From Octopus sinensis (taxonomy: Eukaryota): a DNA stretch of 64,000 bases. The notes beneath the pieces are model-generated. The model was not told the DNA's origin, did not search any database, and saw nothing but the letters and a program-made list of their open reading frames with translations. The translations under genes were made by a program, and so were the position numbers. Where the stretch lies: assembly GCF_006345805.1 (NCBI RefSeq), contig NC_043022.1, positions 22,320,001 to 22,384,000 on the forward strand, given 5' to 3'. Positions 8,363 to 62,215 of the stretch are shown in pieces; position 1 is the first letter of the stretch; each line of letters starts with the position of its first letter.

Positions 8363-8410
8363 TTATAATAAAAATGGTTTCTTTTTTGGTTGTTGGGGTG
8401 CTGGTACATT
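8363..8410 (-). CDS. Large gene terminal coding exon (NVPAPQQPKKKPFLL*)
   Basis: Acceptor ttcttgtgttatttcag, phase 0; TAA at 8365-8363; two minus-strand AATAAA at about 8173-8187. Confidence 0.7.
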   Translation of the reverse strand, partial: NVPAPQQPKKKPFLL

Positions 8411-9822
8411 CTGAAATAACACAAGAAACTCTTTTATGTAAAATCAAGAAATCATTTTAAAATATCAGTTTTAAAACTTTAAAATATTAATTTTCATTTT
8501 ATAGGCACAGGAGTGGCTGTGTGGTAAGAAGTTTATTTCCCAATCATATGGTTCTGGGATCATTCCCACTATGTGGCACCTTGAGCAAATGTCTTGTACT
8601 ATAGCTTCAGGCCAACCAAAGCCTTGTGAGTGGATTTGGGAGAAGGAAACTGAAAGAAGCCTAACATATATATAAATGTGTGTGTTTGTTTGTTTGTGTC
8701 TGTATTTGTCCCCCCATCACTTTGACAACTAATATTAGTGTGCTCACATCCCCATAACTTAGCAATTCAGCAAAAGAGTCCGATAGAATAAGTACCAGGC
8801 TTTAAAGAATAAATATAAGTACTGGGATTGATTCATTCAATTAAAATTCTTCAAAGCAATGCTCCAGCATGGCTGCAGTCTAATGACTGAAACAAGTAAA
8901 AGAAGATTAAATCTTAGCCTTAACTAGCACTATGACCCGGCGTTGCTGGGTCATAGTGCTAATGCATGTCTTACTCCTCTCACTCACTCCACTTCTCTAA
9001 CTAACTAATGTACAATGAATGAAAAAGCAGATTACTTTACAGATGGAATTGGATGGTAACAGACAGTCGTTGGAATCCAAGAAAGCAGTAAAAAAATAAT
9101 TCAGTAGGATGTAAGGGCCTATGCTAGGAGCATAACCAGCCTGCTTATGCGTAGCTTTTCCTTCTTTGGTCACTAAACTTTGCTTGCGAAGACCTGTTGA
9201 GGCAAGTGAAATCAAAATCAAAATCATTTCGATGACTGGCATCTTTGCTAGTGGGGTGCAAAGAGCACCTTACGAGTGTGATCGTTGACAGAGTGGTTAT
9301 TCGAGTATGATCGTTACCAACGTCGCCTTACTGGCACTTATGCTTGCGCTAGTAGGGTGCCAAGAGCACCATCCGAGTGTGATCGTTGCCAGAGCAGCCA
9401 ACTGGCCTCCGTAACCATGGCATGTAAAAGGGTACCATTCGAGCGTGATTGTTACCAACGTCGCTTCACTGGCACCTGTGCTGGCGGCACATGTAAAAAG
9501 ATTCGAGTGAGGTCGTTGCCAGTACCGCCTGACTGGCCCCCGTGCAGGTGGCACATAAAAAGCACCCACTACACTCTCGGAGTGGTTGGCGTTAGGAAGG
9601 GCATCCAGCTGTAGAACCTCTGCCAGATCAAGACTGGAGCTTGGTGCAGCCATCTGGTTGCCAGTCCTCAGCCAAAATCGTCCAACCCATGCTAGCATGG
9701 AAAGCGGACATTAAACGATGATGATGATGATGATGTAAGCAATGTGAGAGATGAGAAGGGTGAAAGGTCAATGTGTTTAATATAAATCAAATAATAACCT
9801 TTTTAGTGGGAAATGGTGATAC

Positions 9823-10166
9823 CTTTCCCTTCCTAGTTGCCTTCAGCACTTGATTCAGGTCAAACAAGCTGTTATCCTTCTTATTATTATTATTAAAACA
9901 AACTGGTTTAGATTTGCTGACAGCCGGTGGTGGAGGAAGGACATTGCGGTATATCCTTTCTGTTTTATTGGAATCGTTGAGATAAAAGTCCTGACCGTTA
10001 ATCCACCAAGACAGGCCCCCATTTCTTTGGATGTTTTTATTATAACTCAGATCTTGTTTGTCAGTCTGGCTGGCCTTGCCACATAGAGGTTTTATTGATA
10101 CTGATGACTTCTCTGTGTTCCTGCTTGTGTTCTTATTTTGTTTGATTCCATTCGTAGAACATTCCC
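9823..10166 (-). CDS. Large gene penultimate exon (GECSTNG...ERIYRNVLPPPPAVSK...LNQVLKATRKGK)
   Basis: 344-nt stop-free frame that is absent from the ORF track (no early start codon); acceptor tttcattttatttttag, donor AAG|GTATCA; phase 1 to 0. Confidence 0.8.
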
Positions 10167-11266
10167 CTAAAAATAAAATGAAAGGTTCAGATTAAATTTC
10201 AGTCATTTTGATTGGGTCAAACCCTTTGGATGGTTATATTATAGTGGGTTAAGACACACAAGGCGGCGAGCTGGCAGAATCGTTAGCACGCCGGGCGAAA
10301 TGCTTTGTGGTATTTCGTCTGCCGCTGTGTTCTGAGTTCAAATTCCGCTGAGGTCAACTTTACCTTTCATCATGGTGAAGGAATCCGGTAATCATATATG
10401 AGCACAAGTAAATGACCAAACACAGATACCAGCAACTGTTGAAGACAGAAACAATAAGCCAAGACTGTAAAGGTGGTGAGCTGGCAGAAATGTTAGCACG
10501 CTGGGCGAAATGTGTAGCCATATTTCGTCTGCCGTTACGTTCTGAGTTCAAATTCCGCCGAGGTTGACTTTACCTTTCATCCTTTCGGGGTCAATAAATT
10601 AAGTACCAGTGACGCACTGGGGTTGATGTAATCGACTTAATCCATTTGTCTGTACTTGTTTGTCACCTCTATGTTTAGCCCCTTGTGGGTAATAAAGAAA
10701 TAGGTTAAGACACTCACTTTGCAACCATGTAGTTATGGGTGCAACACCTTGGGCAAGAGTCTTCTACTATAGCCCAAGGCTGAGGAGTGAATTTAGCAGA
10801 TGGAAACTGTGTGGAAGCCTATCATATATATGTATGTATGTGTGTTTCTTTGTGCTTGTGGTTGTCTGCTCCATCACATGACAACCAGTGTTGGTTTGTT
10901 AAAATCCCAGTAACATAGCAGTTCAGCAAAAGAGACTGATAGAATAAGTGCTAGACTTAAAAAGTAAGTACTGGGGATCAGGCCTTAGGCAAGTACCTTC
11001 TACTACAGCCCCAGGCCAACCAAAAGCTTTGTGAGTGGATTTAATGGGCAGGAAACTGTAAGAAGCCCATCATATATGTGTCTGTAGGGCTGGCACTAGG
11101 AAGTGTAGGACCCAATTAGGGAATTGTTGAGGGCTTGAGTCTCCACCTTTAGCCACAATAATACTAGAAATTCATCACAGTTCCTCCACTCGAGCATGTG
11201 CACAGGACCCTCACATGGTGTGGAGCCCAATTTGAACAAATCTGGTTAATTGGCTTAAAACTGGCC

Positions 11267-11311
<45 letters not shown>

Positions 11312-11918
11312 TGCACACGCATATGTGTGTATGAGTGGGTGAGTTCTTGTATCTCTGTCTGGGCATCATTTGATAGTTACAAACAATGCATACCTTTCCT
11401 TCTTGGGACACAAAACTCTACTTGTGAAGACATGTTGAGGCAAGTTAAAATCAAAATCAAAATCAAAATCGATCAACATCAATGGAAATCGTAGCTGTGA
11501 TACCAGTGCAGGTGGCACATAAGAGAACCATCCAAACGTGGCCGTTGCCAGTGCCGCACCGACTGGCTTCCGTGCCGGTGGCACGTAAAAAGCACCATCC
11601 GATCGTGGCCATTTGCCTGCCTCGTCTGGCACCTGTGCCGGTGGCACGTAAAAAGCACCCACTAGACTCATGGAGTGGTTGGGGTTAGGAAGGGCATCTA
11701 GCCGTAGAAACGCTGCCAGATCAGACTGGGCTTGGTGCAGCCTTCTGGCTTCCCAGACCCCAGTTGAACCATCCAACCCATGCCAGCATGGAAAGCGGAC
11801 GCTAAATGATGATGATGATGATGATGAAACAAGCATACCCTGTCATATAAGAGATCAATATCTATGGTTCCAAAACAAGGCATCATAATTTCTGAGTGAG
11901 TGTGACTGTGGTCTTTAC

Positions 11919-12129
11919 CTTTGTTTAATACTGGAACAACATCTGATGGTAAGTAGCAGTAGAGCACAGGAGGCCCAGAGTCAGAGCCGGCATCAGAGGA
12001 AGCAGCTGCATTGCTTTTGTGTGTAGTTTGTTTGGAGTTCATTACTTCACATGCTGATACCTGTTGCAATAATTCACGTACAAGACAGCCTATTCTCTTT
12101 CCTTCATTGGCTTTCACAGGGACTCCTAA
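11919..12129 (-). CDS. Large gene exon (LGVPVKANEGKRIGCLVRELLQQ...VPVLNK)
   Basis: Acceptor tactttctatag, donor AAG|GTAAAG; 70 codons, phase 0 to 1. Confidence 0.8.
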
Positions 12130-12265
12130 CTATAGAAAGTATTCATTTTTAGGGTTCATGTTGGAAATGTACAACAAAAACCATGTGGTCTCAATTAGAC
12201 AAAATTTACATTCATTACTACTAAATAATATAAACATTCTTTAAAAAATCCTGTTAGCAAATATT

Positions 12266-12994: not shown

Positions 12995-13368
12995 CTCAAA
13001 ACCAAATTGCATCTCCTCAAACTCCACCCATCTAACACCCGTGGACATATTTACAAAGTAAGAAAACAGCACAGCTCCCATAACTTCAGGAAACATTTTT
13101 TCACATTGAGAGTTGCTGAAGCATGGAACAAACTGCCAGCATCGGTTGTTAGTTGTCGGAGCACTGCATCCTTCAAAACTTCCATGCTTCCTGAGGTTCG
13201 CCAACACTACACTTGATTTTCTCCCCTCCATACACACACAAGCATGTATCTGACTCATACATTGTTCGCTTTCCAGACATTTGTACATTACTGCATGTAC
13301 TTTATATGCACTTTCTGACAAGTTGTGGTGCACCTGAGCACTGTATACAATAATTTCATTATTATATT
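12995..13368 (+). mobile_element. CR1-type LINE 3' fragment, family A
   Basis: NTRGHIYKVRK...FFTLRVAEAWNKLP; copies at about 21690-22035(-) and 36360-36775(-). Confidence 0.85.
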
Positions 13369-13919
13369 ATAGATCTCTCCTGTCACAAATCAGTTTTACA
13401 ATGACTCCCTCTATGATCTTCATACACACAAGGCGGCCAGCTGGCAGAAATGTTAGCACGCCGGGCGAAATGCTTTGTGGTATTTCGTCCACCACTGTGT
13501 TCTGAGTTCAAATTCCGCTGAGGTCGACTTCACCTTTCATCATGGTGAAGGAACCTGGTAATCACATATGAGCACAAGTAAATGACCAAACACAGATACC
13601 ATCAACTGTTGAAGACAGAAACAATAAGCCAAGATTGTAAAGGCTGCAAGCTGGTAGAAACGTTAGCACGCAGGGTGAAATGTGTAGCCATATTTCGTCT
13701 GCCGTTACGTTCTGAGTTCAAATTCCGCCGATCTCTCCTGTCACAAATCAGTTTTACCATGACTCCCCTCTATGATCTTCATAACCTGATCCAGTAATTT
13801 ATTTCCTCTGCTTCTCTCTAAGACATCTCCTTTGCCTTCGTAGCAGTTTGTAATGATACTGTTATGACAGTCATTGGGTGTAGCTCTGTCTTGTATGACT
13901 TAATGTATTATATCAAGAT

Positions 13920-14502
13920 AGCAGAATTGTTAGCATGTCGGGCGAAATGCTTAGCAGTATTTCAGCTGTCGTTACGTTGTGAGTTCAAATTCAGCCGAGG
14001 TCGACTTTGCCTTTCATCCTTTCAGGGTCGATAAATTAGGTACCAGTTACGCACTGGGGTCGATGTAATCGACTTAATACCCATGTCTGTCCTTGTTTGT
14101 CCCCTCTATGTTTAGCCCCTTGTGGGTAATAAGGAAACAGCTATTTCATCTGTCGCTACGTACTGAGTTCAAATTCAGCTGAGGTCGACTTTGCCTTTCG
14201 GGGTCGATAAATTAAGTACCAGTTACGCACTGGGGTCGATGTAATCGACTTAATACCTATGTCTGTCCTTGTTTGTCCCCTCTATGTTTAGCCCCTTGTG
14301 GGTAATAAAGAAACAGGTATTTCATCTGTCGCTACGTTCTGAGTTCAAATTCAGCCGAGGTCGACTTTGCCTTTCATCCTTTCGGAGTCGCTAAATTAAG
14401 TACCAGTTACGCACTGGGGTTGATGTAATCGACTTAATACCTATGTCTGTCCTTGTTTTTCCCCTCTATGTTTAGCCCCTTGTGGGTAATAAAGAAATAG
14501 GT
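13920..14502 (+). mobile_element. tRNA-derived SINE family 2 with a Nin/Deu-like core, here as a tandem array
   Basis: Repeated TTTCATCCTTTCGGGGTCGATAAATTAAGTACCAG core. Other copies at about 3186-3590(-), 6790-7177(-), 10262-10702(+), 17375-17580(-), 18125-18352(-), 19487-19795(-), 29757-29990(-), 44373-44725(-). Confidence 0.85.
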
Positions 14503-14674
14503 ATTATCCGCTACCCTACCTCACCAGATATTTTGCACATCTCTGCAACTATTCCTGATGAATCTGTAGCTTACCCACACTTAGCTTATATAAGGTAATA
14601 CCGGTCTCTCCACAACTTAAAATTAGTTCAATTTTATTAAATCAGTATGTAGTGATGCTACTGTGTAAGTTTCA

Positions 14675-14740
14675 GCGCACATGCGCAGAATTGGACTACT
14701 TCCGGTTGGCCACCGGAAGTTTTCCTCATGCGCATGTGCA
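14675..14740. promoter_or_regulatory. Palindromic NRF1-like / ETS / ETS / NRF1-like motif cluster in an intron
   Basis: GCGCACATGCGC (14675), ACTTCCGG (14698), ACCGGAAGT (14712), TGCGCATGTGCA (14729). Confidence 0.45.
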
Positions 14741-15192
14741 GGAACTGGAACCTAAAAGCCTGACCGCTAAATCGGTCTTTCTGGCATGAGCAGCACTAGC
14801 GGTTGGACATGGCTTGACTTTCTTTCAGGGAACAACCCTACACTCAAAGAACCTCACCCAAACGAATCGGGACCGAACTGACGAATCGTTTTGACTTGCA
14901 CGAGAAAGCATCGCAACAAGTCCTGCGGATTCGGCTGCCGGTTTCCCTACTAGAGATACATGTGCACTAGTTCTTACCTGTAACTGCAGAATAAACCACC
15001 ACTTACTGTTATCGAAGACCACCTGACTTTGTCTCCGTTTATTCAACTTAAATTGTATGTGACAGGATCAGATTGGACACCCCTCCAGTGTTCCTGAACT
15101 CTCATCCTGTTACAAGTATATAGTTGACATGTTCTTTAACTTCAGTTGCCCCCACCTTAATTACCAGTAAATTCCATTTGATCAATTTCCAT

Positions 15193-15940
15193 TGAGAATT
15201 CATGGAAGAAGTTTCATGCGAATATGTGGATTTCGCAAGCGGTCCCCAACAATCCTGCATGTAGAGACATCCTGTTTGCCGCAGATTGTCTGCAGACGCA
15301 GGGACAGAACGACCGAGGAGCCGCTGGTTGCCGAAACAGACACCCCAAGAATTTTCACCAGAGCCCTGTCTGCCGGTTTGTGGCCCCGCATGTAGAGACA
15401 TCCTGTTTGCGCAGATTGTCCGCAGATGCAGAGACAGAACAACCAAGGAGCTGCCGGTTGCCGAAACAGACACTCCGAGGATTTTCACCAGAGCCCCGTC
15501 TGCCGGGTTGTGGCCCTAATACCACTTGGTGTCAGACCAATCCGCCTTGGGTGGCCCTACCAGGAACCGAAGTTCCCGACGGCATAGCTCTGACACTACC
15601 CGTTGCCAGCGTGTCCACCATGGTGAGGAGGGGATGGACTTGTAGGCTTCTGGTTGGTGAACTGAGCCGTGATGTCCTTCTCCCAACTCCACTTCCCAAC
15701 TGGTGGAAACGCGCGGGCGGGCAGCTGAAGACCTGGGTTACGACGATCAAGGAGGACCTCTCTGTGCTCACGGGACCGCAGGTGGTTGGCCTGTGCCGAT
15801 GGAACCGTGACTGGCTCGCTATCTCCAGTGAACTGGCGCAGGACCATCATGCGTGGGCTGCCATGGTTTGAGATGCCTCGAGGGTGGTAGAAGAAGCCGA
15901 CTCAACCCGCCCAGGGTGAATGTCGCCACAAGTACAAGTA
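15193..15940 (+). mobile_element. 5'-truncated RTE-type LINE
   Basis: ORF2 C-terminal remnant WKRAGGQLKTWVTTIKEDL...LAQDHHAW, CAAGTA tail, 14-bp TSD TGATCAATTTCCAT (15179-15192 / 15941-15954). Confidence 0.8.
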
Positions 15941-16239
15941 TGATCAATTTCCATGGAAACCATATAATAAGTTAATATTTTAGATAAGTAATAAGTATAT
16001 AAATATTAATCTATTTCTTTGCAATTTCCTTGAAGAATTTTAGTCAAACTCATCAAACCCAGTGCTTATGTTTTGTAAAGCCTAGTACTTATTCTGTTAG
16101 TCTCATTTGCTGAACTGCTAAGTTATGAGAGCATAAACACACCAACACGGGTTGTCAAATGGTGGTTCAGACAAACACATACACAAAGACACACACATAT
16201 ACAATATAGAAGTGTAGCAGTAGTAGTAGTAGTGTTTAC

Positions 16240-16307
16240 CTTCTCTTGACTGGGAAATTCATCATAATGTAGATCAGAATTCTGGAAACCAGTGATGTAG
16301 ATGGCTT
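16240..16307 (-). CDS. Large gene exon (EAIYITGFQNSDLHYDEFPSQEK)
   Basis: Acceptor ttatgttattcttacag, donor AAG|GTAAAC; phase 1 to 0. Confidence 0.8.
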
Positions 16308-17741: not shown

Positions 17742-17844
17742 CTTTGTTGTTCACTGCATTCTTGTTGGACTCTTTGACAGGCATTGACATCACACAACAG
17801 ACCATCTTTAATTTAGGTGAATTATTACTAATATCCTTCTTTGC
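17742..17844 (-). CDS. Large gene exon (AKKDISNNSPKLKMVCC...NAVNNK)
   Basis: Acceptor tttctttcattctcatcag, donor AAG|GTAAAA; phase 0 to 1. Confidence 0.75.
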
Positions 17845-19299: not shown

Positions 19300-21029
19300 G
19301 GGTGGCCCAAAAAACCCAAATTTGAGAAATGTTGAACTCTCACCCCATCAATTTGTGAGGTTTGACATATAAACACTCTGCTTGAAATTCTAAGAAAATT
19401 CCACAGAATTTAATGTTGCCACTAAGCGATTCAATATTTTATTTTTAGCATGAAATGAAACTTATCATAATATTTTTTTTTTCTTTACTGCCCACAAGGG
19501 GGTAAACATAGAGGGGACAAACAAAGACAGACAAAGGGATTAAGTCGATTATATCGATCCCAGTGCATAACTGGTACTTATTTAATCGACCCCGAAAGGA
19601 TGAAAGGCAAAGTCGACCACGGCAGAATTTGAACTCAGAACATAGCGACAGACAAAATACCTATTTTTTACTACCCACAAGGGGGTAAACAAGGACAGAC
19701 AAAGGGATTAAGTCGATTACATAGACCCCAGTGCATAACTGGTACTTATTTAATCGACCCTGAAAGGAAGAAAGGCAAAGTCGACTTCGGCGGAAATAGC
19801 TTGTTATTGAGATATAGTAAAACTATTTCATTTATCAATGTATGAAATACTTAGTACAGTGACCAAATCATTTGAACAATACAGCAGACACATATACATA
19901 TATATTCTATATGTCAGCCAAATGAGCTTCTTCTCTCCCTGCTTGGGTGAGGCTGCACTTCACTCCATGCCACAGGCTGTATTCACAAAACAATATTGTT
20001 ACAGCTTTGTTGATGTGCCAGTGCTCCACAGCTGTAGTGTTTTAACCCTTTAGCATTTGAACTGGCCATATCCGGCCAAAAGTATTCTGCCTGTTTTATG
20101 TTCAAACTGGCCAGATCTGGTCTCTCACACCAACCCTACAATATCGTTTTAAAAATTAACAGCTACCTCATCAAAATCTCATAGCTACAAGATAATGCAT
20201 GATTAGTTCAAAACAATGTAGATGAAGAAGCATTCATTTTGGCAGAATAATGCGAACATTAAAGGGTTAAGCAAACATGTCTATTTTAATGATAAGAAGT
20301 GAAAGACAAATTTGACTTATTGGATATATGGATGAAACGATTAGTAATAAAAAAAAAACTCCCATCAATTGGAGATGTATTACGATGCCTTTTCTATCTC
20401 ACACATGATAAGAAAATGATATCAAACACAGATCATTTATTTCTCAATGCTCAGAGAGAAAAAGGAAGGCAAGGTTATACGAATGCTATTAACAGGAATT
20501 ATGTTGCAAAGCAACAGAGGAAATACAGCCGGTTAGAAGGAGAGAATAGAAAAAAATCAGAAATTCTTTGCACAAAAGAGCAATCAATTGTTACTTTGGA
20601 AAGTAACAGTGATAACAGCAGTCGTCGGTCTAATGATGAGCCACGACCTAGATCATCAAAAACTCCTCCTAGTAAGAGATCAAAAACTCATGAGCAAATA
20701 ATATCAGCTGATTTGGCATTGGATAAAGTTGAAATAAGCTATTGGAGTGCAATGTTAGTAGTATCTGCTACTGCTTCGACCTGTGGTAAAGATATTCCAC
20801 ATGCATATGTACATAACAAGTAATCTACATATATATATATGTTTGCTGATATATATGTATATAAGTATATATAAATGACCATAATATATCAGCTTTGAGG
20901 CACAACCAAATATTGATCAATCATACTGAAAATTCACTAAGAACATTTTTATACCTAACCTCATAATTTGCAGGGGTGTGATCTAAAATATAAAAAATGT
21001 AAAAGTCACTCTTATAAAATGGGCCACCC
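19300..21029 (+). mobile_element. Deleted DNA transposon (possibly Sola2-like) with transposase remnant at 20299-20823
   Basis: Short TIR GGGTGGCCCA...TGGGCCACCC; ORF with KLPSIGDVLRCLFY, LFLNAQREKGRQG and LALDKVEIS motifs; nested SINE and piggyBac MITE. Superfamily uncertain. Confidence 0.5.
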
Positions 21030-21415: not shown

Positions 21416-21419
<4 letters not shown>

Positions 21420-21710: not shown

Positions 21711-22555
21711 GTACAGTGCTCAGGTGCACTACAACTCATCTAAAGTGTATATATAATCAGGTGTAGTTTCGACGGATTTCGGGAAGCATGAGGGCCTTAA
21801 AGGATGCAGTGTCATGGCAGTCAACAACTGATGCAGGCAGTTTATTCCACGCTTCAGCAACCCTGAGTGTGAAAAAATGTTTCCGAAAGTCATGGGAGCT
21901 GTGCTGTTTTCTGACTTTGTAGGCATGTCCACGTGTGTTAGACACATGGAGATCAAAAAGGTGTTCAGTGTTGTTGTTGGTGAGGTGGTTGATAACCTTG
22001 TGGGTGTTTACCAAGTCCGTCGCCAGACGCCGGAGCTTCAGTGAATCCATATGTGTGTGTATATATATACACACACACACATATATATGTATATTAGTGT
22101 AGTAAGTAGCTTGCTAACCAACCACATGGTCCTGGGTTCAGTCCCACTGCATGGCATCTTGGGCAAGTGTCTTCTACTACAGGGCCAACTATAGACTTGC
22201 AAGTGGATTTGGTAGACGGAAACTGAAAGAAGCCAGTCGTATATATATATATATATGTATGCATGTATATATTTCTGTGTGTGTGTGTGTTTGTCCCCCA
22301 CCACCACCACCATTGCTTGACAACCAAAACTAGACCATTAGAATAAGTACTAGGCTTACAAAGAATAAGTCCCGGAGTCAATTTCTTCGACTAAAGGAGG
22401 TGTTCCAGCATGGCCGCAGTCAAGTGACTAAAACAAATAGAACAATAAAAGAATAATACACATATATATATATACATATATATATACATACGTATATACA
22501 CATATACACACACACACACACATATATACATATACATACATATATATGTATACAC

Positions 22556-25462: not shown

Positions 25463-25515
25463 CTCTGACATATTCTTTACATTGGTGTTAGGTGGAGGAG
25501 CTTTGTTGGTGCAAC
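25463..25515 (-). CDS. Candidate phase 1-to-0 exon (GCTNKAPPPNTNVKNMSE)
   Basis: Acceptor gtcttttgtcttag, donor GAG|GTAGGT, open frame. Confidence 0.55.
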
Positions 25516-32271: not shown

Positions 32272-32690
32272 ATTTGTCTTATGAAGAAAGGCTGAAGATG
32301 CTCGACCTTTATTCTCTAGAAAAACGCCACCGCCGTTGTGATCTCATTCTTGCTCACAACATCATAAGCAGAAAGTGTAACCTCTCGAAAGAGCTGTTCT
32401 TCACTCCTGCTCCAGAGCGTCAGCTGCGGGGTCACTCCGAAAAGCTCTATCTGCGACGATTTCATCTCAATCGAAGAAGAGGGGCTTTCTCCGTCCGGGT
32501 TGCAGATCTGTGGAATAAGCTGCCGGACGAGAAAGTGAAGATGTCGACGACTGCTTGGTTCAAAGTCTCTCTTGACCAGAAATGGCCTGAACTCTTTGCA
32601 TGAACACCCTCCCTGTACATAACTCCATGTCCCCCTACATGGCCTTGCTTTTTGCTTTTTGAGTCAAAAAATTAACTAACTAACTAACTA
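32272..32690 (+). mobile_element. CR1-type LINE 3' fragment, family B
   Basis: YEERLKMLDLYSLEKR...LRGHSEKL...FSVRVADLWNKLP, (TAAC)n tail; copies at about 45470-45945 and 47650-47900. Confidence 0.85.
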
Positions 32691-32793: not shown

Positions 32794-33064
32794 CTAACAT
32801 TTTTGGAGTGTCTGATAGATATCCACTGTCTGGAGAACAACCTGATTGTAAGGTAAGCCCTGTCTCTGATGTCTTCTTTGACAAAGAGGGAGAAGATCTG
32901 TCAACAACTTTACTGCCTGAATTTGAACTTTCAGCACCTTTCTGGGGTGTTTTCTTTAAAATGGGATTGCCAACCTTCTTTGAGGCATATGCATTTTGAG
33001 ACTGTCCTACTTTCGACACTGGGGTCGTATTCAAGGAGACAAAACTCCAGTGCTTCGCCGGTTG
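32794..33064 (-). CDS. Large gene exon, Ser/Lys-rich (QPAKHWSFVSLNTTPVSK...SDTPKML)
   Basis: Acceptor tttttgtttgttgtag, donor TAG|GTAAAT; 90 open codons, phase 0 to 1. Confidence 0.8.
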
Positions 33065-34739: not shown

Positions 34740-34768
34740 TGGTGGTTTTCTGATCCAGGGTGAGTAAT
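34740..34768 (-). CDS. Large gene, 29-nt micro-exon (DYSPWIRKPP)
   Basis: Acceptor ttttatttttctttatag, donor CCA|GTAAGT; phase 1 to 0. Confidence 0.75.
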
Positions 34769-35374: not shown

Positions 35375-36990
35375 TGATTGTGTTTATATTAGAACAGCAT
35401 TGCAACTGGATTAATGTTAGTTATACAAAGACTGAGATTGTGGTAGTATTAACTGATCTGTGATTGGATTATAGTTGGCTATAATTGAATTGTGATTGGA
35501 TATCTATTGGTTACAAGTAAAGTGACTGGGTTAGTGTTAGTTATAAACTGGACTATGATATAGTTCCTCTTTATTTATTCAATATACAGCTGCGTGCATG
35601 CGCACATACACGCGAGTGCTGTCCAAATCTCCGACCAATCGCATACAGCTAGCTGGCATTCAATTGGCGTATCAAGTTTTGGGCATTTTGATTGGGTTTT
35701 CGATAGAAAATTCACAAAAGAGTCACTTCTATTGATTTTTTTAATGGCTTTGCGGGGTGACTGGGGAAATGTAAAGATGTGCACGACCACCCTTGGACGG
35801 TTTTGAATGACCATAGAAAGTGCGAGCCCTCTAACTGAAAAATTGTGGATTTGTATAAAGGACATGCACACAGACATTTTGCCGTTTATATATATAGATA
35901 TTACTATCATTGGGTTACTACTGTGAGTTGCCTTTTAGTCAGGTGAGACAGGCTCTTTACAAAACCTCTGAGACAGGTGGGACAGAGGAAGGAGGACAGT
36001 ATCCTCAAACGAGAGACTTTTCTTGAATACTTATAACAGAATGGACTTCCCTAAACACACCTAAGAATTAGATGGTGGTGTTCAACTGGGTAATGAATTA
36101 TCTACCACCCACATAAGACATAGTGGAATTAGAACTTGGAATACAAAGAGCCAGAATAAATACCATCAGGGGTCTCCTCTAATGAACTAACACTTCCATC
36201 AATCCACAACTTTAAACTTTACTTATCAATCCTGTAGGAATGATATTCAAAGTTGACCTCAGTAAGATTTGAACTCAGAATGCAAAGTGCTAGAATAAAC
36301 ATTGCAAGGTAATTCATCCAACACACCAATGGTTCTGTAAATTTCCACCTTATTATAATATAATATAATGAAATTATTGTATACAGTGCTCAGGTGCACC
36401 ACAACTTGTCAAACAGTGCATATAAAGTATATGCAGTAATGTACAAATGTCTGGAAAGTGAACAGTGTATGAGTCAGATACATGCTTGCGTGTGTATGGA
36501 GGGGAGAAAATCAGGTGTAGTGTTGGCGAATCTTAGGAAGCATGGAAGTTTTGAAGGATGCAGTGCTCCGACAACTAACAACTGATGCCGGCAGTCTGTT
36601 CCATGCTTCAGCAACTCTTAGCGTGAAAAAATGCTTCCAAAAGTCATGGGAGCTGTGCTGTTTTCTGACTTTGTAAACATGTCCACGGGTGTTAGACAGG
36701 TGGAGTTTGAAAAGGTGCTCAGAGTTATTGTTAATAAGATGGTTAATAATTTTATGGGTGTCTGCCAAGTCAGCTGCCAGATGTCAGTAATCAGATTAAG
36801 ATTAAGTGGAAAATGATTACATCAGTCTCAGTTACAGATGGACAGACGTTGGGTCACACTTTGTTATAACTGAACTTGTTTAATCAAAAGCAAGACCATA
36901 ATTTAAATTTTTAGCGATGTCACTTACAACAGATATTTTATGCAGAGATGATTATTTCATCATCATCATCAACAACATTTAACATCTGCT

Positions 36991-39227: not shown

Positions 39228-39396
39228 CATAATGAGGTTCTGCAGCTTCATAGTTATCCGTATGAAAGTGTTGAGGGTTGTTATAGAAACCTTTTGAAAA
39301 TGATCGAGTGTGAGAAGGATTTGTGTAAGAGCTGGTGTAAATAGATTCATAGGGTTCGGCATGTCTGTGGTCATTATGGTGGCAATGGTGGTGGTC
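39228..39396 (-). CDS. Large gene exon (DHHHCHHNDHRHAEPYESIY...EAAEPHY)
   Basis: Polypyrimidine acceptor ending aaacag, donor ATG|GTATGG; phase 0 to 1. Confidence 0.75.
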
Positions 39397-44940: not shown

Positions 44941-44990
44941 CTTCTGATGCCTCGATGGAATTTTATCATACATGTCATCAATCATATAAA
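44941..44990 (-). CDS. Large gene, 50-nt exon (VYMIDDMYDKIPSRHQK)
   Basis: Acceptor tttctctgttgttacag, donor AAG|GTAAGT; phase 1 to 0. Confidence 0.8.
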
Positions 44991-47249: not shown

Positions 47250-47366
47250 CTGTGTCATTGAAATGTACTCCTCGTGATTTGTTCTTCGGCGTATGTCTTG
47301 TCAGGGACAAAGTTCTTCGCCTGTCTTTCTCATTTAACCAGTCTGTCTCTTGGTATTCATCAGAGT
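47250..47366 (-). CDS. Large gene exon (YSDEYQETDWLNEK...KSRGVHFNDT)
   Basis: Acceptor gtgttttcag, donor CAG|GTAAAT; phase 1 to 1. A second acceptor 10 nt upstream would give phase-0 entry. Confidence 0.75.
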
Positions 47367-47479
47367 CTGAAAACACCTGAAAAACAACAGGGGAGTGCAG
47401 AATCACATTTCTGATTTATACAGATCAATTTTTGCAAACATACATACATAAATACATACTGTTGTAGGGAATTAGTAAT

Positions 47480-48783: not shown

Positions 48784-50094
48784 TAATAATAATAATAATA
48801 ATTATAATTATAATAATAATAATAAAAATAATAGTGATACCTGACTGTTCAAAGTATGACCACCTTTCATCAACATCCCTGGAAATTGACCTAAAGGTAG
48901 AATATAAAGCATTCACAGTTGATGGAAAACAACTACAATAACAACAGCAACAACAATAATAATCCTTTCTATTAAAGGCACAAAGCTTGAAATTTGCAGG
49001 GAGGGGATTAGTCAATTGCATTGACCCCAGTGTTTGACTGGTACTTAATTCATCAATCCCAAAACGATGAAAGGCAAAGTCGATCTCGGCTGAATTTGGA
49101 GTCAGAACGTGGCAACAATAATAATAATCAGATTTATTTTGTAAGTTAATGACATCAACATTTAATGTTTATTCAATGCGACCAAAACATCAATGCTGCT
49201 ATTTATTTTCTGATTTTGAAGCAAGAAATAATAATAATAATAACTAACTGGACCCATAAAAACTTCACAGAAAATATAGAAAAATGTAAGCGTCTGTAAA
49301 TTGTGTGCTGGTGCCATGAGAAATGTTTCTGTATCGTGACACTTACAGAATATAGAAAGAAGCGTGAAACTAATAACTAAATAATCCAACCAAAATATTT
49401 CATTTACCCAAAGTCTACAGAATTACTATTTAGCCTTAAAATACATTGTACATATTAAAATAACCTTCTTGGTTTAGTAGTACAGAATGTTCTTCTGGTA
49501 TTCTTTTATTTGTTTCAGTCATTTGATGGTGGCCATGCTAGAGCACCACGCTTTAGTCGAAGAAATCAACCCCTGGACTTATTCCCTGTAAGCCTGGTGC
49601 TTATTCTACCAGTCTCTTTTGCCAAACAGCTAAGTTAAGGGAATGAAATCACACCAACATCGGTTATCAAGCAATGGTGGTGGGGGACAAACACAGTCAC
49701 AAACACACACATAAATATATACACATACATACATATATATATATACGTATATATATACATATATATAAATATTTATATTATATTAAATTAGAGATAAAAC
49801 CACTATTAGGCAAATCAAACAGTGGAAATCATAAACCAATACATAGAAATAAAATTAATTAAAAAATATATAAAAAATATAAATTTTATATTTTTTATAT
49901 ATTTTTTATATATTTTTAAATTAATTTTATTTCTATGTATTGGCTTATGATTTCACTGTTTGATTTGCCTAATAGTGGTTTTATCTCTAATTTAATATAA
50001 TATATATCTATACTATAAAATTAGATTTAATCCTAAATCTAATTTTTCCCTGTAAGTTTGGATTTACTCCCTAATATTATTATTATTATATTAT

Positions 50095-50154
<60 letters not shown>

Positions 50155-51272: not shown

Positions 51273-51306
<34 letters not shown>

Positions 51307-51505: not shown

Positions 51506-52421
51506 AATTGTTGCTGCCGTCATATATTTTAGAGATGTCGTTAGTGCTTCGGCTCTTTATGTGTCGTCTCAGGTTCATCTCACTGTTCTGTTTGCGTACT
51601 TCATTGCTGCCACCTCTTACGAAAATCTTCTCCTTGTTTCTTTCCTTACCATGTGAGAGACGTTTGTTGACAAAAGAGTTTGGAGAGTAAACATTGTTAT
51701 ACAACTGGTCTCTTTTCCTAAACAGAATCTCTTCGTCAGGGTCGTCTGAATATCCCCAATCTACAGGCAAAGTGTCGTCATGGCTCTGGAAACTGAAGGT
51801 ATTAAATATTTGATCGGTTGCGTCCATGTCCGAACTGTTATGCTGCCATACTGTATTAGGGTACACATCATTCTGCTGGCTTTTCTTTCTGGCATCACCT
51901 TGCAGCTTCCCACCCCCCAAAATATTAAGTTGCTCTCTTTTGATGGCTCTCTGCTGCTGCCTGCTGCTGCTCCTAAACACATCCTGTTCACTGCCCTTCT
52001 CTGATACATCTTTTTTCCGCTTCTTCTTACCATACGCATCATACGGCTTCTCACTTGGCCACAACAACCCCGGCTGTCTTTGGACAGTCCAACCACACGG
52101 CTTCATTGCACTTTCCTTTCCGTTCTGCTTCGACATATACCAAGAGGCATGCGGGCCTCTTCTCGCTCTAGCAGTACCCTGCTCTAAATATTGTTCCTCT
52201 ACTTCTTCCACATCTCCCTCCTCATCTCCTTCCTCCTCCTCCTCTTCATCCTCCTCCTCCTCCTCATCATCTTCTTCCTTATTTCCACTCACAAATAAGC
52301 GACTCTTTTTTCTGCTAGCATTCTGTTGTCTCTTTGTTCCATCAATAATCTTTTTTGCTCTTCTTTGTCCAGCATCCCGTTGTCTGGCATTTACACGTTC
52401 TTTTACATTCTCATCAGTTTC
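51506..52421 (-). CDS. Large gene, 916-nt exon with an acidic E/D tract and basic clusters
   Basis: 305 open codons (extends ORF 51474..52292 upstream); acceptor cattgtag, donor T|GTAAGT; phase 0 to 1. Confidence 0.85.
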
Positions 52422-53949
52422 CTACAATGAGTACGTTAACAGAATATTAGATTAAGAGAATACTATGTTAACAGAATACTGAAATCGCAGCAATCTATAA
52501 ACATAACAGCAAACAATGTCAAAATCAACCACACGTGATGTTTACACTTAATAGCTACATAGATAGAGTGGTTGGCGTTAGGAAGGGCATCCAGCTGTAG
52601 AAACTCTGCCAGATCAGATTGGAGTCTGGTGCAGCCATCTGGTTCGCCAGACCTCAGTCAAATCGTCCAACCCATGCTAGCATGGAAAGCGGACGTTAAA
52701 CGATGATGATGATGATAGATATTATTGACAAGATATATTTGCACTGAATGACTACACACATCGTGTTAACATTGAATGGCTACAACACAGCGTATTTACA
52801 CTTGATAACTTCGCACTGTGTACACATTGCATACTTGTGTGTGCATTGATGAGAGTTGGCAACAGGAAGGGCATCCAGCCATAGAAAATCCTACTTCAAC
52901 ATATTCCATCTGACCCTTGCAAACATGATAAAAGGGATAATGGTAGTATTTGCACTACTAACTACACACTGTTTTTACATTTAATAAATACACACTAATA
53001 TCTATACATCATGTTCTCACATAAATAACCAAACCATGTGTTCACAATTAATAACCACACACTCCTTTTGTGACTGTATAATTAAAATCTATACACCATG
53101 TCTATCAATCCAGGAAACATCTACACGTATTTTGTCTATATATCCAGTGAACATCTACATACTCTCTGTTTGTCTACCTACCTAGTCAACATCTGTATAC
53201 TGTGTATATCTATCCAGTCAGCATCTACATACTACATCTATCTATATATGTATCACGTCAGCATCTATAAACTGTGTCTGTCTAATAAAAACCTACAAAG
53301 TATGTCTATCAGTTTCTCTATACACTCATCATCTACACTCTCTCTCTTTTACTCTTTTACTTGTTTCAGTCATTTGACTGCGGCCATGCTGAAGCACCGC
53401 CTTTAATCGAGCAACTCGACCCCGGGACTTATTCTTTTGTAAGCCCAGTACTTATTCTATCGGTCTCTTTTGCTGAACCGCTAAGTAACGGGGACATAAA
53501 CACACCAGCATCGGTTGTCAAGCAATGCTAGGGGGACAAACACAGACACACACATATATATATACATATATACGACGGGCTTCTTTCAGTTTCCGTCTAC
53601 CAAATCCACTCACAAGGCTTTGGTCGGACCGAGGCTATAGTAGAAGACACTTGCCCAAGGTGCCACGCAGTGGGACTGAAAACAAGCTACTTACCACACA
53701 GCCACTCTTGTGTTTGTCTACATAATAAGTCAACATCTACACATTGTCTTTCTGTCCGTTTGTCCAGTCAACAATTTACACACTGTCTGTCTAGTTAAAA
53801 GCACATTAGACACTGTCTATCTAGTTAACCAATGTAGGGAGCAGATTTAATCAGTACGTAGATATTTTGAAAATATCTCACAGAGTGACGATTGTGTTCT
53901 GCATAGTTACAGGCAAGGCATAGCACCCATTCAGTCACCTTGCCAGGGA

Positions 53950-54986: not shown

Positions 54987-55088
54987 CTGTCTGTTTTCAT
55001 CTGTTGTTTCATGGACACCGATTCCATCAACAGTCTTCTCCGTGTTCTCATTGAAAGAATGCTTTATTTCTGACATTATAGAATCAAC
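54987..55088 (-). CDS. Large gene exon (VDSIMSEIKHSFNEN...TTDENRQ)
   Basis: Acceptor tgttgtag, donor CAG|GTAACA; 102 nt, phase 0 to 0. Confidence 0.75.
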
Positions 55089-56314: not shown

Positions 56315-56385
56315 CAATGCATCAGTGTCAATGTTGGGTTTTGTAGCACCATCTTCCAGTAACTTGGCAGCTTGGCTGACGAGAT
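56315..56385 (-). CDS. Large gene exon (DLVSQAAKLLEDGATKPNIDTDAL)
   Basis: Acceptor ttctgtattcag, donor TTG|GTAAGA; phase 1 to 0. Confidence 0.75.
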
Positions 56386-57585: not shown

Positions 57586-57703
57586 CTTCCAGTTTGATAG
57601 TTTGTTGGTGTACTACTGATGAAGGTAGATTATTATTTGTGCTGTGGATGGCCATTTCTTCTTGATGGTGGGTCTGTTGGAGACCATCATCTGATACAGC
57701 AAG
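57586..57703 (-). CDS. Large gene exon (LAVSDDGLQQTHHQEE...QQTIKLE)
   Basis: Acceptor tttttctgtctcag; weaker donor AAG|GTCTGC; phase 0 to 1. Confidence 0.65.
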
Positions 57704-58037: not shown

Positions 58038-58114
58038 CAATGTAGTGTCTGTACTAGGCTCCTCTTGGTAAATTTCAACTTGACTTTTATATAGGACATG
58101 GGTCTGGTAAGGTT
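58038..58114 (-). CDS. Large gene exon (EPYQTHVLYKSQVEIYQEEPSTDTTL)
   Basis: Acceptor cttctcttcaacag, donor TTG|GTAAGC; phase 1 to 0. Confidence 0.75.
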
Positions 58115-58826: not shown

Positions 58827-58926
58827 CTTTATTTGGATCTGGCTGAATTGTTGACTCAACACGTGGTGGGGGAAGTGGTCGACGTTTTACTTCTTTCCAG
58901 GGTTCTGTTTGCAGCACATTGTAATC
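58827..58926 (-). CDS. Large gene exon (DYNVLQTEPWKEVKRRPLPPPRVESTIQPDPNK)
   Basis: Acceptor ttgcag, donor AAG|GTCAGT; phase 0 to 1. Confidence 0.75.
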
Positions 58927-59609: not shown

Positions 59610-59676
<67 letters not shown>

Positions 59677-60414
59677 AACTATGTCGTTTTAATTTCAAGC
59701 AACACCGTATATCTCTGCTAGTTATAAATAAGCATCACCATCAGGCAAGTGATTTTGTCTGTTTCCAGTATTCCATGAAAATCATGTCTGGCCATGGGGA
59801 GATGTTATCTTGCCTGAAAACAGATAAGGGTTGATGACAGGAAAGGCATCTGGCTATAGAAATATCTGCTTTGACAAAATTCCAACTAATTCATGTAATC
59901 ATCAGAAAGTGGATGTTAACCCTTTCGCTACAGTATTTATTTTGAGATGCTCTGTGTTTCTTTCAATTACTTTAAATATAACAAAGAATTTAGTAAAATA
60001 ACTTAGTTATCATTAACCTAGTGTTAGGAATGTAAATTGTGACTAAGGCTTGATGGAATATTTTAATTCAAAACTTACGAAAACAAGACATTTTACCACA
60101 GAGCCAGAGCCGGTTTCAGCCGGGTTGGTAACAAAAGGGTTAAATGATGGTGGTGATGATAATGATGATACTGATAATGATGGCGATGGCAATGGTAGCT
60201 GTGGCAATGATGATAATGGTGATGACAACAACAGCAATGATGAGGAAGAAGATGGGCTACATGAGGTTCGTGTGTGAAAATTGTTGTTGTTCTCCTGAAA
60301 TATGTGGACGTAGACAGTGAGAGAACAATGTGAATTCAGTGAGACATGTTGCCTGCTCAGAGTGAAGAGGGAGGTAGGCTGTGGCTGATAGTTAATTAAA
60401 GAAATGTTACATAC

Positions 60415-60452
60415 ATTATAGATAGCATCTTCGGAGGAACTCATGCAGGAAA
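60415..60452 (-). CDS. Large gene, 38-nt exon (VSCMSSSEDAIYN)
   Basis: Strong acceptor ttttcttcatttcacag, donor GTATGT; phase 1 to 0 fits both neighbours. Confidence 0.75.
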
Positions 60453-60760
60453 CTGTGAAATGAAGAAAATGATTAAGGTATCAAGAATTATTGAAGTTAT
60501 TGTTATTGTTCAGGTCAGTGCTTAGAATCGAACTCGGAATCTTGGGATTAGTAGTCCGAGAGCATATGGCATAGTGGTTAAGAGCGTGGGCTACTAACCC
60601 CAAGATTCCAAGTTCCCTACTTAAACATGGATATTCTGTTAGAACAAACTATACTGTGATAGTTACCATAAGAGAAACTCTCATATTGGCTTTTGGTGCA
60701 AAATGCATTCTTGTTTATATAGCTAGCGGGGAGAAAAATCCTCACCATCTTAAGTGCCGA

Positions 60761-61658
60761 GACCACCAGATTGTGTGATTTCTACCACCCTTGGTCTGTC
60801 AGTGATAGATGCTCAAATGCTAGAAATAGTAGCAATTCATCCCCTTGCCAGTGATACATAGACCACCAGATCGTGTGATTTCTACCACCCTTGGTCTGTC
60901 AGTGATAGATGCTCAAATGCTAGAAATAGTAGCAATTCATCCCCTTGCCAGTGATACATAGACCACCAGATCGTGTGATTTCTACCACCCTTGGTCTGTC
61001 AGTGATAGATGCTCAAATGCTAGAAATAGTAGCAATTCATCCCCTTGCCAGTGATACATAGACCACCAGATCGTGTGATTTCTACCACCCTTGGTCTGTC
61101 AGTGATAGATGCTCAAATGCTAGAAATAGTAGCAATTCATCCCCTGCCAGTGATACATAGACCACCAGATCGTGTGATTTCTACCACCCTTGTCTGTCAG
61201 TGATAGATGCTCAAATGCTAGAAATAGTAGCAATTCATCCCCTTGCCAGTGATACATAGACCACCAGATCGTGTGATTTCTACCACCCTTGGTCTGTCAG
61301 TGATAGATGCTCAAATGCTAGAAATAGTAGCAATTCATCCCCTTGCCAGTGATACATAGACCACCAGATCGTGTGATTTCTACCACCCTTGGTCTGTCAG
61401 TGATAGATGCTCAAATGCTAGAAATAGTAGCAATTCATCCCCTTGCCAGTGATACATAGACCACCAGATCGTGTGATTTCTACCACCCTTGGTCTGTCAG
61501 TGATAGATGCTCAAATGCTAGAAATAGTAGCAATTCGTCCCCTTGCCAGTGATACATAGACCACCAGATCGTGTGATTTCTACCACCCTTGGTCTGTCAG
61601 TGATAGATGCTCAAATGCTAGAAATAGTAGCAATTCATCTCCTTGCCAGTGATATATA
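60761..61658. repeat. Minisatellite, 9 x about 100-bp units
   Basis: Unit GACCACCAGATCGTGTG...CCAGTGATACATA recurs at 60761, 60861, 60961, 61061, 61160, 61259, 61359, 61459 and 61559. Confidence 0.95.
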
Positions 61659-62007
61659 GAAAAACAGGGCCAGAACAGGCGCTGTTGGTGTGATTAGCCA
61701 CTGAGCTTGTTAAAAAATATATATTAGCAACACAGGTCTTGTCAATGGTGGATGCTCGACCACTAGAAATAACAGTGGTTCATCTCTCAGCTGCTGATAT
61801 ATAGGACAGTACCTGAACAGGTGCTGGTACTGTGACTAGCTAGTGAGCTTGTTAAAAAAATATTTACATGGTTGAACATGTCTGTTGATGGAATATTGGT
61901 GGTGGTGGTGGTGATTGTGATGGTGGAGATACTGTGGTGTTGGTATTTTGCATAGCAGGGATGTGTGGATGCTTATGATACCAGAGAGAACGTTTTGTGT
62001 TGGTTAC

Positions 62008-62215
62008 CTTCTGAGAAAGTGTTGTCGGCATCATTGAAGTCCGGTAAGATCACACCTGAAGGATGAGAACCTGCTCCGTCGTACGGCTTCAGTCTTGTAG
62101 TAAGGCCCTCGCTAGACGCTGGCTGCATCTCAAACAAGTGTGCTCGTATATTCTTAGACATGGCTTCCATTGATGATATCATGCTCTCCATTTGGTTGAT
62201 ATCCTTCTCAAAATT
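62008..62215 (-). CDS. Large uncharacterised gene, exon 1 of the reconstructed CDS (NFEKDINQMESMISSMEAM...DADNTFSE)
   Basis: Acceptor ttcag, donor AAG|GTAACC; open frame, phase 0 to 1. Possible start ATG at 62191. Confidence 0.75.

What the first reader, a model, noticed from the sequence alone, without database searches (positions are those of the whole stretch)
8363..62215. Hidden 54-kb, about 19-exon gene for an unrecognised ~1050-1100 aa protein
Seen: a chain of exons with canonical splice sites whose phases match end to end (62215 to 32794, and 17844 to 8363). Several are under 60 nt and one 344-nt exon is missing from the ORF track. The protein is largely low-complexity: an acidic tract, Lys/Arg clusters, His-rich and Ser-rich parts, PLPPP/LPPPP motifs and Tyr motifs (IYND, IYRN). 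I recognise no folded domain. Inference: a fast-evolving or lineage-restricted scaffold/adaptor protein, likely to be split or missed by annotation.
Basis: partly seen in the sequence, partly recalled or inferred. Interest (0 to 1): 0.75.

Follow-up and report, generated by a model that had tools for sequence, protein, structure and literature searches.

The report
Known uncharacterised octopus disordered-protein gene
The window holds 20 of the 21 coding exons of a real octopus gene for a roughly 1,090-residue, mostly disordered, fast-evolving protein with no detectable relatives outside Octopus. NCBI already annotates it in Octopus bimaculoides as "uncharacterized protein LOC106883040", so it is genuine but not hidden.

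Summary
The exon chain is real. A search with my draft spliced protein found one database cluster: Octopus bimaculoides LOC106883040, "uncharacterized protein", isoforms X1 (1092 aa), X2 (1058 aa) and X3 (905 aa).

Isoform X1 maps collinearly onto the window's minus strand from 62221 to 8363 as 20 GT-AG exons (3183 nt, 1060 codons, no internal stop). Coding exon 1 (33 aa) lies beyond the window's right edge.

Compared with the O. bimaculoides locus:
- Every exon has the same length, except one in-frame 3-nt difference.
- All splice dinucleotides are kept.
- Amino-acid identity is 87.8%.
- dN/dS is 0.55 (bootstrap 0.40-0.76).
- The CDS has 3 indels, all in frame, against about 26 expected at the intron rate.
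- It has no stop codon, against about 7.5 expected.

So this is one conserved, weakly constrained coding gene, not two.

Pfam and PDB sequence searches found nothing. An exhaustive HMMER scan of 1.84 billion representative proteins returned only the query itself. A single-sequence AlphaFold2 model has mean pLDDT 34, with one long N-terminal helix.

"Hidden/unrecognised" does not. Function remains inferred: a disordered scaffold, probably nuclear.

The parts
62008..62221 (-). Coding exon 2 (214 nt, phase 0). Holds an in-frame ATG at 62191 and the predicted long N-terminal helix. The true start codon is in exon 1, outside the window.
   Evidence: tblastn of P0001/P0003 and junction refinement. 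93.9% nt identity to L001 15637-15850. Helix at residues 28-62 of P0001.
60415..60452 (-). Coding exon 3 (38 nt).
   Evidence: AG/GT kept, 97.4% nt identity.
58827..58926 (-). Coding exon 4 (100 nt), with the conserved KRRPLPPPR motif at 58887-58861.
58038..58114 (-). Coding exon 5 (77 nt).
57586..57703 (-). Coding exon 6 (118 nt).
56315..56385 (-). Coding exon 7 (71 nt), with a short predicted helix (LVSQAAKLLED).
54987..55088 (-). Coding exon 8 (102 nt = 34 aa). This is a cassette exon, present in isoforms X1 and X3 and skipped in X2. It is the best-conserved exon (99% nt).
51506..52421 (-). Coding exon 9 (916 nt). Holds the acidic tract at 52277-52194 and the SV40-like basic cluster KKKRKK at 52028-52011. 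It is the least conserved exon (89% nt).
48841..48890 (-). Coding exon 10 (50 nt).
47250..47376 (-). Coding exon 11 (127 nt), with conserved RRRTLS (47322-47305) and the RVxF-like RGVHF (47274-47260).
44941..44990 (-). Coding exon 12 (50 nt).
39228..39396 (-). Coding exon 13 (169 nt), the His/Tyr-rich part (DHHHCHHNDHRH).
34740..34768 (-). Coding exon 14 (29 nt).
32794..33064 (-). Coding exon 15 (271 nt), the Ser/Lys-rich part.
25463..25515 (-). Coding exon 16 (53 nt).
   Evidence: Acceptor cttttgtcttag|GTT and donor GAG|GTAGGT are identical in both species.
17742..17844 (-). Coding exon 17 (103 nt).
16240..16307 (-). Coding exon 18 (68 nt).
11919..12129 (-). Coding exon 19 (211 nt). It is skipped in isoform X3, which shifts the frame and gives an early stop in exon 20.
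9799..10166 (-). Coding exon 20 (368 nt), with IYRN (9954-9943) and LPPPP (9939-9925).
8363..8410 (-). Last coding exon 21 (45 nt plus TAA at 8365-8363). AATAAA/ATTAAA hexamers lie at 8187 and 8178 downstream.

Best explanation
SHOWN. Window 62221-8363 (minus strand) carries coding exons 2-21 of one protein-coding gene. It is the orthologue of Octopus bimaculoides LOC106883040 ('uncharacterized protein', XP_014789390.1/391.1/392.1), in a closely related octopus (dS about 0.10). The locus is syntenic. Repeat-filled introns make it about twice as long as in O. bimaculoides. The reading frame, the exon lengths and every splice site are conserved. The protein is under weak purifying selection (dN/dS 0.55).

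SHOWN, within the limits of the tools. The roughly 1,093-aa product has no known domain and no detectable homologue outside Octopus. It is predicted to be almost wholly disordered, apart from a helix of about 35 residues near the N-terminus.

INFERRED, at about 0.3 confidence. The protein acts as an intrinsically disordered scaffold that works through short linear motifs conserved between the two species:
- an SV40-like KKKRKK cluster beside a 28-residue acidic tract, which suggests nuclear import and binding to basic proteins or chromatin;
- a KRRPLPPPR SH3-type ligand;
- an RRRTLS basophilic-kinase site followed by a loose RVxF-type motif (RGVHF), which could dock protein phosphatase 1;
- Tyr-x-Asn motifs.

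Inclusion or skipping of exons 8 and 19 modulates the product. Skipping exon 19 truncates it.
For: - Only database hit: P0001, E = 0, 100% query coverage.
- The exon model on L001 reproduces P0003 exactly. The same 19 junctions are present in the window with near-identical splice contexts.
- Exon lengths are equal and AG/GT is kept throughout.
- The window ORF is 1060 codons with no stop, 87.8% amino-acid identity and 3 in-frame indels.
- dN 0.055, dS 0.101, omega 0.55, bootstrap CI 0.40-0.76.
- Introns show 7.3% mismatch and 8.3 indels per kb, of which 24% are multiples of 3.
- P(no stop) = 2e-4 and P(3 or fewer indels) = 1e-8 under neutrality.
- The whole window is collinear with L001 14877-52027.
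- No exon base lies in an intra-window repeat.
- No Pfam hit and no PDB hit. The exhaustive phmmer scan returned only the query itself.
- AF2 mean pLDDT 33.8, helices at 28-62 and 214-224 only.
- Motif positions and their conservation.
Against: - No transcript evidence could be examined here. The O. bimaculoides model is a computational (Gnomon) prediction.
- The very short exons (29-53 nt) rest on that model plus conserved splice sites and absence of indels. Their substitution rate does not differ from that of introns.
- Constraint is weak. CDS divergence is 6.2% against 7.3% for introns, and differences by codon position are 43/76/77.
- 'No homologue' depends on which cephalopod proteomes the libraries hold, and I could not establish that (one search failed).
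- A single-sequence AF2 run gives low pLDDT for many real folds.
- The functional motifs are short and common by chance. RGVHF meets only the loose RVxF pattern; G at the second position is outside the stringent consensus as I recall it. LPPPP and IYND are not conserved in O. bimaculoides.
Confidence: 0.85

Rival explanations
1. The chain is a non-functional or decaying ORF: a pseudogene, a lncRNA with a fortuitous ORF, or an over-prediction by an annotation pipeline.
For: - Substitution divergence in the CDS (6.2%) is only slightly below that of alignable introns (7.3%).
- Second codon positions differ as often as third positions, 76 against 77.
- Several 60-codon windows have omega above 1.
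- No homologue exists outside Octopus.
Against: - The ORF is intact over 1060 codons in both species.
- There are 3 indels, all in frame, against about 26 expected (P = 1e-8).
- There are no stops against 7.5 expected (P = 2e-4).
- Overall omega is 0.55 and its bootstrap interval excludes 1.
- All 40 splice dinucleotides are conserved.
Confidence: 0.03
2. Two independent genes abut near 28-26 kb: one spanning 62.2-32.8 kb and one spanning 17.8-8.4 kb.
For: - Exons 15 and 17 are 15 kb apart in the window, and their phases do not match directly.
- The only link is a 53-nt exon whose nucleotide identity (90.6%) is no better than that of introns.
Against: - Exon 16 has strong acceptor and donor sites that are identical in both species, and it restores the frame.
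- All three O. bimaculoides isoforms run through it.
- In O. bimaculoides the two flanking introns are only 0.86 and 1.3 kb, so the large gap here comes from repeat insertion.
- No start-codon exon or terminal-exon signal was identified at the supposed boundary.
Confidence: 0.04
3. It is a very diverged member of an existing bilaterian family of disordered scaffold or regulatory proteins. Sequence similarity has eroded beyond what HMMER can detect, so it is not truly lineage-restricted.
For: - The protein evolves fast, with dN 0.055 at dS 0.10.
- Disordered proteins commonly lose detectable similarity.
- The conserved blocks look like linear motifs rather than domains.
- The locus sits between conserved genes, an MFS transporter gene and a DUF4735 gene, so an old gene could be sitting in old synteny.
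Against: - Single-sequence phmmer against 1.84e9 representatives found only the query itself at E <= 1e-3.
- There is no Pfam or PDB hit even at E <= 1.
Confidence: 0.2

Closest known systems
Octopus bimaculoides LOC106883040, 'uncharacterized protein' (RefSeq XP_014789390.1 X1 1092 aa; XP_014789391.1 X2 1058 aa; XP_014789392.1 X3 905 aa; older fragment UniProt A0A0L8FJ67, 349 aa)
   Same: - Full-length collinear alignment at 87.8% amino-acid identity.
- The same 20 exons with the same lengths and phases, and the same splice sites.
- The same neighbouring sequence across the whole window.
   Different: - It comes from a different, closely related species (dS 0.10).
- Introns are twice as long (50.7 kb against 25.2 kb) through repeat insertions.
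- Exon 9 is 3 nt longer overall.
- LPPPP and IYND are present here but read LPPPT and NYND there.
- Exon 1 is not inside the window.
Taxonomically restricted ('orphan') cephalopod genes in general. Octopus-specific genes are discussed in the octopus genome and cell-atlas literature, e.g. papers listed such as PMC9712504 and PMC9815951 (not read in detail).
   Same: - No domain.
- No homologue outside the genus in large libraries.
- Low complexity and rapid evolution.
   Different: At about 1,090 aa, 21 coding exons and at least three isoforms, it is much longer and more exon-rich than typical young genes. That argues for an older, diverged gene rather than recent de novo birth.
Disordered PP1-docking regulators that carry an RVxF motif after a basic, phosphorylatable stretch (a class known from the PP1 literature; cited from my own knowledge)
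   Same: - The conserved stretch RRRTLSLTRHTPKNKSRGVHFNDTVYMI fits [RK]-x(0,1)-[VI]-{P}-[FW].
- It has hydrophobic residues a few positions downstream.
- It lies in a disordered context.
   Different: - It has no sequence homology to any known PP1 regulator.
- Gly at the second motif position lies outside the stringent consensus.
- Binding has not been tested.

Membership tests
Orthologue of O. bimaculoides LOC106883040 | End-to-end collinear protein similarity. | tested here: met
   87.8% identity over 1056 aligned residues, with 7 gap columns. E = 0 and 100% coverage.
Orthologue of O. bimaculoides LOC106883040 | Same exon-intron structure: number, lengths, phases and GT-AG sites. | tested here: met
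   20 of 20 in-window exons match. Lengths are identical except exon 9 (916 against 913 nt). All AG/GT sites are kept.
Orthologue of O. bimaculoides LOC106883040 | Conserved genomic neighbourhood (synteny). | tested here: met
   The window is collinear with L001 14877-52027. A DUF4735 exon lies downstream in both.
Functional protein-coding gene (as opposed to a pseudogene or lncRNA) | Purifying selection on the reading frame. | tested here: met
   Omega 0.55, CI 0.40-0.76. No stops, P = 2e-4. 3 in-frame indels against about 26 expected, P = 1e-8.
Functional protein-coding gene (as opposed to a pseudogene or lncRNA) | Spliced transcript and protein observed. | not testable with these tools
   No RNA-seq or proteomics resource was available. 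No paper mentions the accessions.
Any Pfam family or any protein with a solved structure | Significant profile or sequence match. | tested here: not met
   Pfam gave no hit above the gathering score, and none at all for P0003 at E <= 1. The best PDB hit has E = 0.97.
Taxonomically restricted (orphan) gene | No homologue outside the lineage in comprehensive protein libraries. | tested here: inconclusive
   Exhaustive phmmer against 1.84e9 representatives returned only the query itself, and the word-indexed search found only the O. bimaculoides cluster. I could not establish which other cephalopod proteomes the libraries hold, and no cephalopod genomes could be searched.
Intrinsically disordered protein | Lack of a predicted stable fold over most of the length. 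| tested here: inconclusive
   AF2 mean pLDDT 33.8, 1009 of 1058 residues below 50, and only helices 28-62 and 214-224. Composition is S/K/N/E/D/P/Q-rich and hydropathy is negative throughout. The single-sequence mode limits the weight of this result.
PP1-interacting protein (RVxF class) | An RVxF docking motif in a disordered region, conserved. | tested here: inconclusive
   RGVHF (47274-47260) fits the loose pattern and is identical in both species. It fails the stringent consensus at position 2 (from my own knowledge).
PP1-interacting protein (RVxF class) | Physical binding to the PP1 catalytic subunit. | not testable with these tools
   Needs pull-down or ITC.
SH3 / EVH1 ligand adaptor | Conserved PxxP (class I/II) or [FLWY]PPPP motif. 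| tested here: inconclusive
   KRRPLPPPR is conserved. LPPPP is not conserved; it reads LPPPT in O. bimaculoides. These motifs are short and frequent by chance.
Transposable-element-derived ORF | Repeated copies or TE protein domains in the exons. | tested here: not met
   None of the 3183 exon bases falls in an intra-window repeat. No TE domain was found.

The most novel reading that the evidence does not exclude
The gene is a genuinely octopod-restricted invention: a long, alternatively spliced, almost fully disordered nuclear scaffold. It uses conserved linear motifs (a KKKRKK NLS with an acidic tract, a PLPPP SH3 ligand, and an RRRTLS...RGVHF kinase/PP1 switch) to wire conserved signalling enzymes into an octopus-specific process.
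Probability: 0.12. Interest if true: 0.45.

Novelty: already known. Interest (0 to 1): 0.2.

Why it matters
The result is mainly a quality check. It shows that a reader working from raw sequence can reconstruct a 54-kb, 20-exon gene almost exactly.

It also supplies a curated exon model for a species in which I found no matching protein in the libraries. That model includes a 53-nt exon that is easy to miss, and it shows that the 5' exon lies outside the window.

Biologically it is one more fast-evolving, domain-free, apparently Octopus-restricted protein. Such genes are candidates for lineage-specific biology, but they are numerous. Nothing here singles this one out until expression, localisation or partners are known.

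Tried and rejected
1. A word-indexed homology search with the 916-nt exon alone found nothing. The likely cause is poly-Glu words swamping the candidate list. Repeating the search with the acidic tract removed and the other exons added found the orthologue.
2. My own crude splice-PWM and codon log-odds DP gene model recovered 12 true exons (for two of them only one boundary is exact: it started exon 2 at the ATG and used a wrong acceptor for exon 11). It also invented false ones: 26809-26775, 25543-25463 (wrong acceptor), 15876-15772, 15289-15156, 14977-14858 and 12868-12850. It read through the exon-20 donor as well. I discarded it in favour of the orthologue-guided model.
4. The look-up of encoding contigs with P0001 failed because only the longest isoform is on record. 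P0003 worked.
5. I tried to learn which cephalopod proteomes the library holds by searching with neighbour-gene exons.
6. Looking up the 272-aa ORF of exon 9 to identify the source assembly found nothing on record.
7. Rfam found no RNA family in the window.
8. Literature searches for the locus and the accessions found nothing.
9. I did not run a fold search, because the model's confidence is too low to give meaningful matches.
10. A TE origin for the exons was rejected.

Full report
**What the window is.** The 64-kb window is AT-rich (about 38% GC). Half of it consists of sequence repeated within the window, and it is full of SINE-like and microsatellite ORF debris. It is therefore a repeat-rich animal genome. 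Later calls show that the whole window is collinear with a stretch of Octopus bimaculoides chromosome CM046626.1 (locus L001).

**Checking the observation.** These include 62221-61976, 52421-51477 (315 codons), 33064-32794, 12129-11701 and 10191-9790.

I built a crude gene finder from generic splice PWMs and a codon log-odds table trained on these pieces. In a 54-kb span, however, small phase-compatible exons can always be found, so sequence alone could not settle the short exons.

**Finding the orthologue.**
- A first homology search with the 916-nt exon found nothing. The probable reason is that its poly-Glu words swamped the word index.
- A second search, with my draft spliced protein minus the acidic tract, returned exactly one cluster at E = 0 with 100% coverage. 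It was 'uncharacterized protein LOC106883040 isoform X2 [Octopus bimaculoides]', 1058 aa (P0001).
- That cluster holds isoforms X1 (1092 aa, XP_014789390.1), X2 and X3 (905 aa). It also holds an older UniProt fragment, A0A0L8FJ67 (349 aa).
- The O. bimaculoides genomic locus was fetched as L001.

**Exon model.**
- On L001, a GT-AG model of 21 coding exons reproduces isoform X1 exactly.
- The same procedure on the window gives 20 exons, E2-E21, running from 62221 to 8363.
- Every splice dinucleotide is kept and the splice contexts are nearly identical.
- Exon lengths are identical in the two species, except E9 (916 against 913 nt).
- Coding exon 1 (33 aa) lies 5.5 kb upstream of E2 in O. bimaculoides. 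It has no counterpart in the 1.8 kb of window upstream of E2. The gene therefore runs off the right edge of the window.

- The coordinates 32794, 17844 and 8363 are exact.
- The IYND motif does span the E3/E4 junction.
- There is no 344-nt exon in the supported model.

**Is it really coding?**
- The window CDS is 3183 nt, or 1060 codons, with no internal stop. It is 87.8% identical in protein to O. bimaculoides and has only three indels, all in frame.
- Nei-Gojobori estimates are dN 0.055, dS 0.101 and omega 0.55 (bootstrap 0.40-0.76).
- The 12.2 kb of alignable intron shows 7.3% mismatches and 8.3 indels per kb. Only 24% of those indels are multiples of three.
- At that rate the CDS should carry about 26 indels, so P(3 or fewer) = 1e-8.
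- Placing the 196 observed substitutions at random creates 7.5 stop codons on average, with P(0) = 2e-4.
- No exon base overlaps any intra-window repeat, against 53% of intron bases.

The frame is therefore under selection. Amino-acid constraint is weak: CDS divergence is 6.2% against 7.3% for introns, and differences by codon position are 43/76/77. For the shortest exons the support is the O. bimaculoides model, the conserved splice sites and the absence of indels. Their substitution rates add nothing.

**What the protein is.**
- Pfam finds nothing. The PDB sequence search finds nothing (best E = 0.97).
- An exhaustive phmmer scan of P0001 against 1.84 billion representative proteins returns only the query itself.
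- A single-sequence AlphaFold2 model has mean pLDDT 33.8. It shows one helix of about 35 residues (28-62, pLDDT about 62-64) and a short helix at 214-224. Everything else is coil.
- Composition is rich in S, K, N, E, D, P and Q, and hydropathy is negative throughout.

Conservation between the two species is uneven.
- Conserved: KRRPLPPPR, KKKRKK, RRRTLS...KSRGVHFNDTVYMIDDMYD and ERIYRNV.
- Not conserved: LPPPP (LPPPT in O. bimaculoides) and IYND (NYND).
- The lowest omega values fall in CDS codon blocks 181-240, 421-480, 541-600 and 841-900.

**How it most likely works.** What is shown is one conserved, alternatively spliced, weakly constrained coding gene. In the O. bimaculoides isoforms, E8 is a cassette exon and skipping E19 truncates the product. 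Both behaviours are reproducible in the window sequence.

What is inferred is that the product is an intrinsically disordered scaffold acting through short linear motifs.
- The SV40-like KKKRKK next to a 28-residue acidic tract suggests nuclear import and binding of basic partners.
- The N-terminal amphipathic helix could mediate self-association or docking.
- KRRPLPPPR is an SH3-type ligand.
- RRRTLS followed by RGVHF resembles the arrangement of a phosphorylatable basic stretch plus an RVxF motif seen in PP1 regulators. This comparison rests on my own knowledge. RGVHF fits only the loose consensus.

All of these motifs are short enough to occur by chance. I put about 0.3 on the scaffold/nuclear reading and much less on any single partner.

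**Rivals.**
- A decaying or non-coding ORF is excluded by the indel and stop statistics.
- Two separate genes are excluded by E16 and by the single orthologous product. In O. bimaculoides the introns flanking E16 are only 0.86 and 1.3 kb, so the 15-kb gap here comes from repeat insertion.
- A deeply diverged member of an older family remains possible at about 0.2. The protein evolves fast, and I could not search other cephalopod genomes or establish which cephalopod proteomes the libraries contain (one search failed).

**Novelty and verdict.** The gene is already in RefSeq for a sister species as a full-length, three-isoform 'uncharacterized protein', so it is not hidden.

The characterisation as domain-free, low-complexity, fast-evolving and apparently lineage-restricted is borne out. 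So is the warning about mis-annotation: the old 349-aa UniProt model is a mis-framed fragment of E6 plus E9 with read-through into the intron.

No protein from the window's own species turned up in the libraries. I cannot tell whether that is because the gene is unannotated there or because that proteome is not held. No paper mentions the locus. Interest is low: this is a real but ordinary orphan-type gene of unknown function.

Noticed in passing
window 1-6300 (+ strand); exon-like blocks at about 1000-1150 and 3040-3150: The downstream neighbour is a DUF4735-domain gene on the opposite strand, as in O. bimaculoides (L001 45387-54023). The block around 3040-3150 matches Pfam DUF4735 (E = 7e-10). 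The block around 1000-1150 is 100% identical in protein between the species, yet the word-indexed search found no candidates for it. It may therefore not be coding sequence of that gene.
   Followed up: partly
window 60760-61660: A tandem array of 9 copies of a 100-nt unit, 98% matching, inside the intron between exons 2 and 3. It produces a ladder of identical 38-aa pseudo-ORFs in all three frames.
   Followed up: partly
window 4718-5638 (ORF 5405-5139, - strand): This stretch has no collinear counterpart in O. bimaculoides. It carries an ORF that, by eye, resembles a mariner/Tc1 transposase C-terminus (...VWQQDSAPCH...). Pfam gave no hit at E <= 0.1, so the resemblance is unverified.
   Followed up: partly
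window 8363-62221, introns: Introns total 50.7 kb here against 25.2 kb in O. bimaculoides. Only 12.2 kb is alignable, and 53% of intron bases are repeated within the window. The largest expansions are introns 15-16 (7278 against 864 nt) and 16-17 (7618 against 1297 nt).
   Followed up: yes
window 62215-62223: Exon 2 has a tandem acceptor, aaatag|ATTCAG|AAT, with two AGs 6 nt apart and in frame.
   Followed up: no
window 13000-16029 (GC 0.48; ORF 15224-15871 + strand, 215 aa) and 20299-20823 (+ strand, 174 aa): These are GC-rich intronic stretches with long ORFs and no Pfam domain. The only hit is a sub-threshold Peptidase_S30 match, E = 0.007. The first stretch has no collinear match in O. bimaculoides. 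They are probably transposable-element remnants.
   Followed up: partly
window 32274-32603 (+), 21757-22080 (-), 36511-36768 (-): Three related ORFs (...LRRFHLNRRRGAFSVRVADLWNKLP... / ...FFTLRVAEAWNKLPASVV...) look by eye like the C-terminal tail of a LINE-type retrotransposon ORF2. No Pfam hit was found for the one tested.
   Followed up: partly
window 51826-52455 (+ strand): A 209-aa ORF antisense to exon 9, with a poly-Ser run opposite the poly-Glu tract. It is a shadow ORF, not a gene.
   Followed up: no
method note: The word-indexed protein search missed an 80%-identical orthologue when the query contained a long poly-Glu tract. It found it once the tract was removed. A negative from that tool on a low-complexity query is not reliable.
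   Followed up: yes
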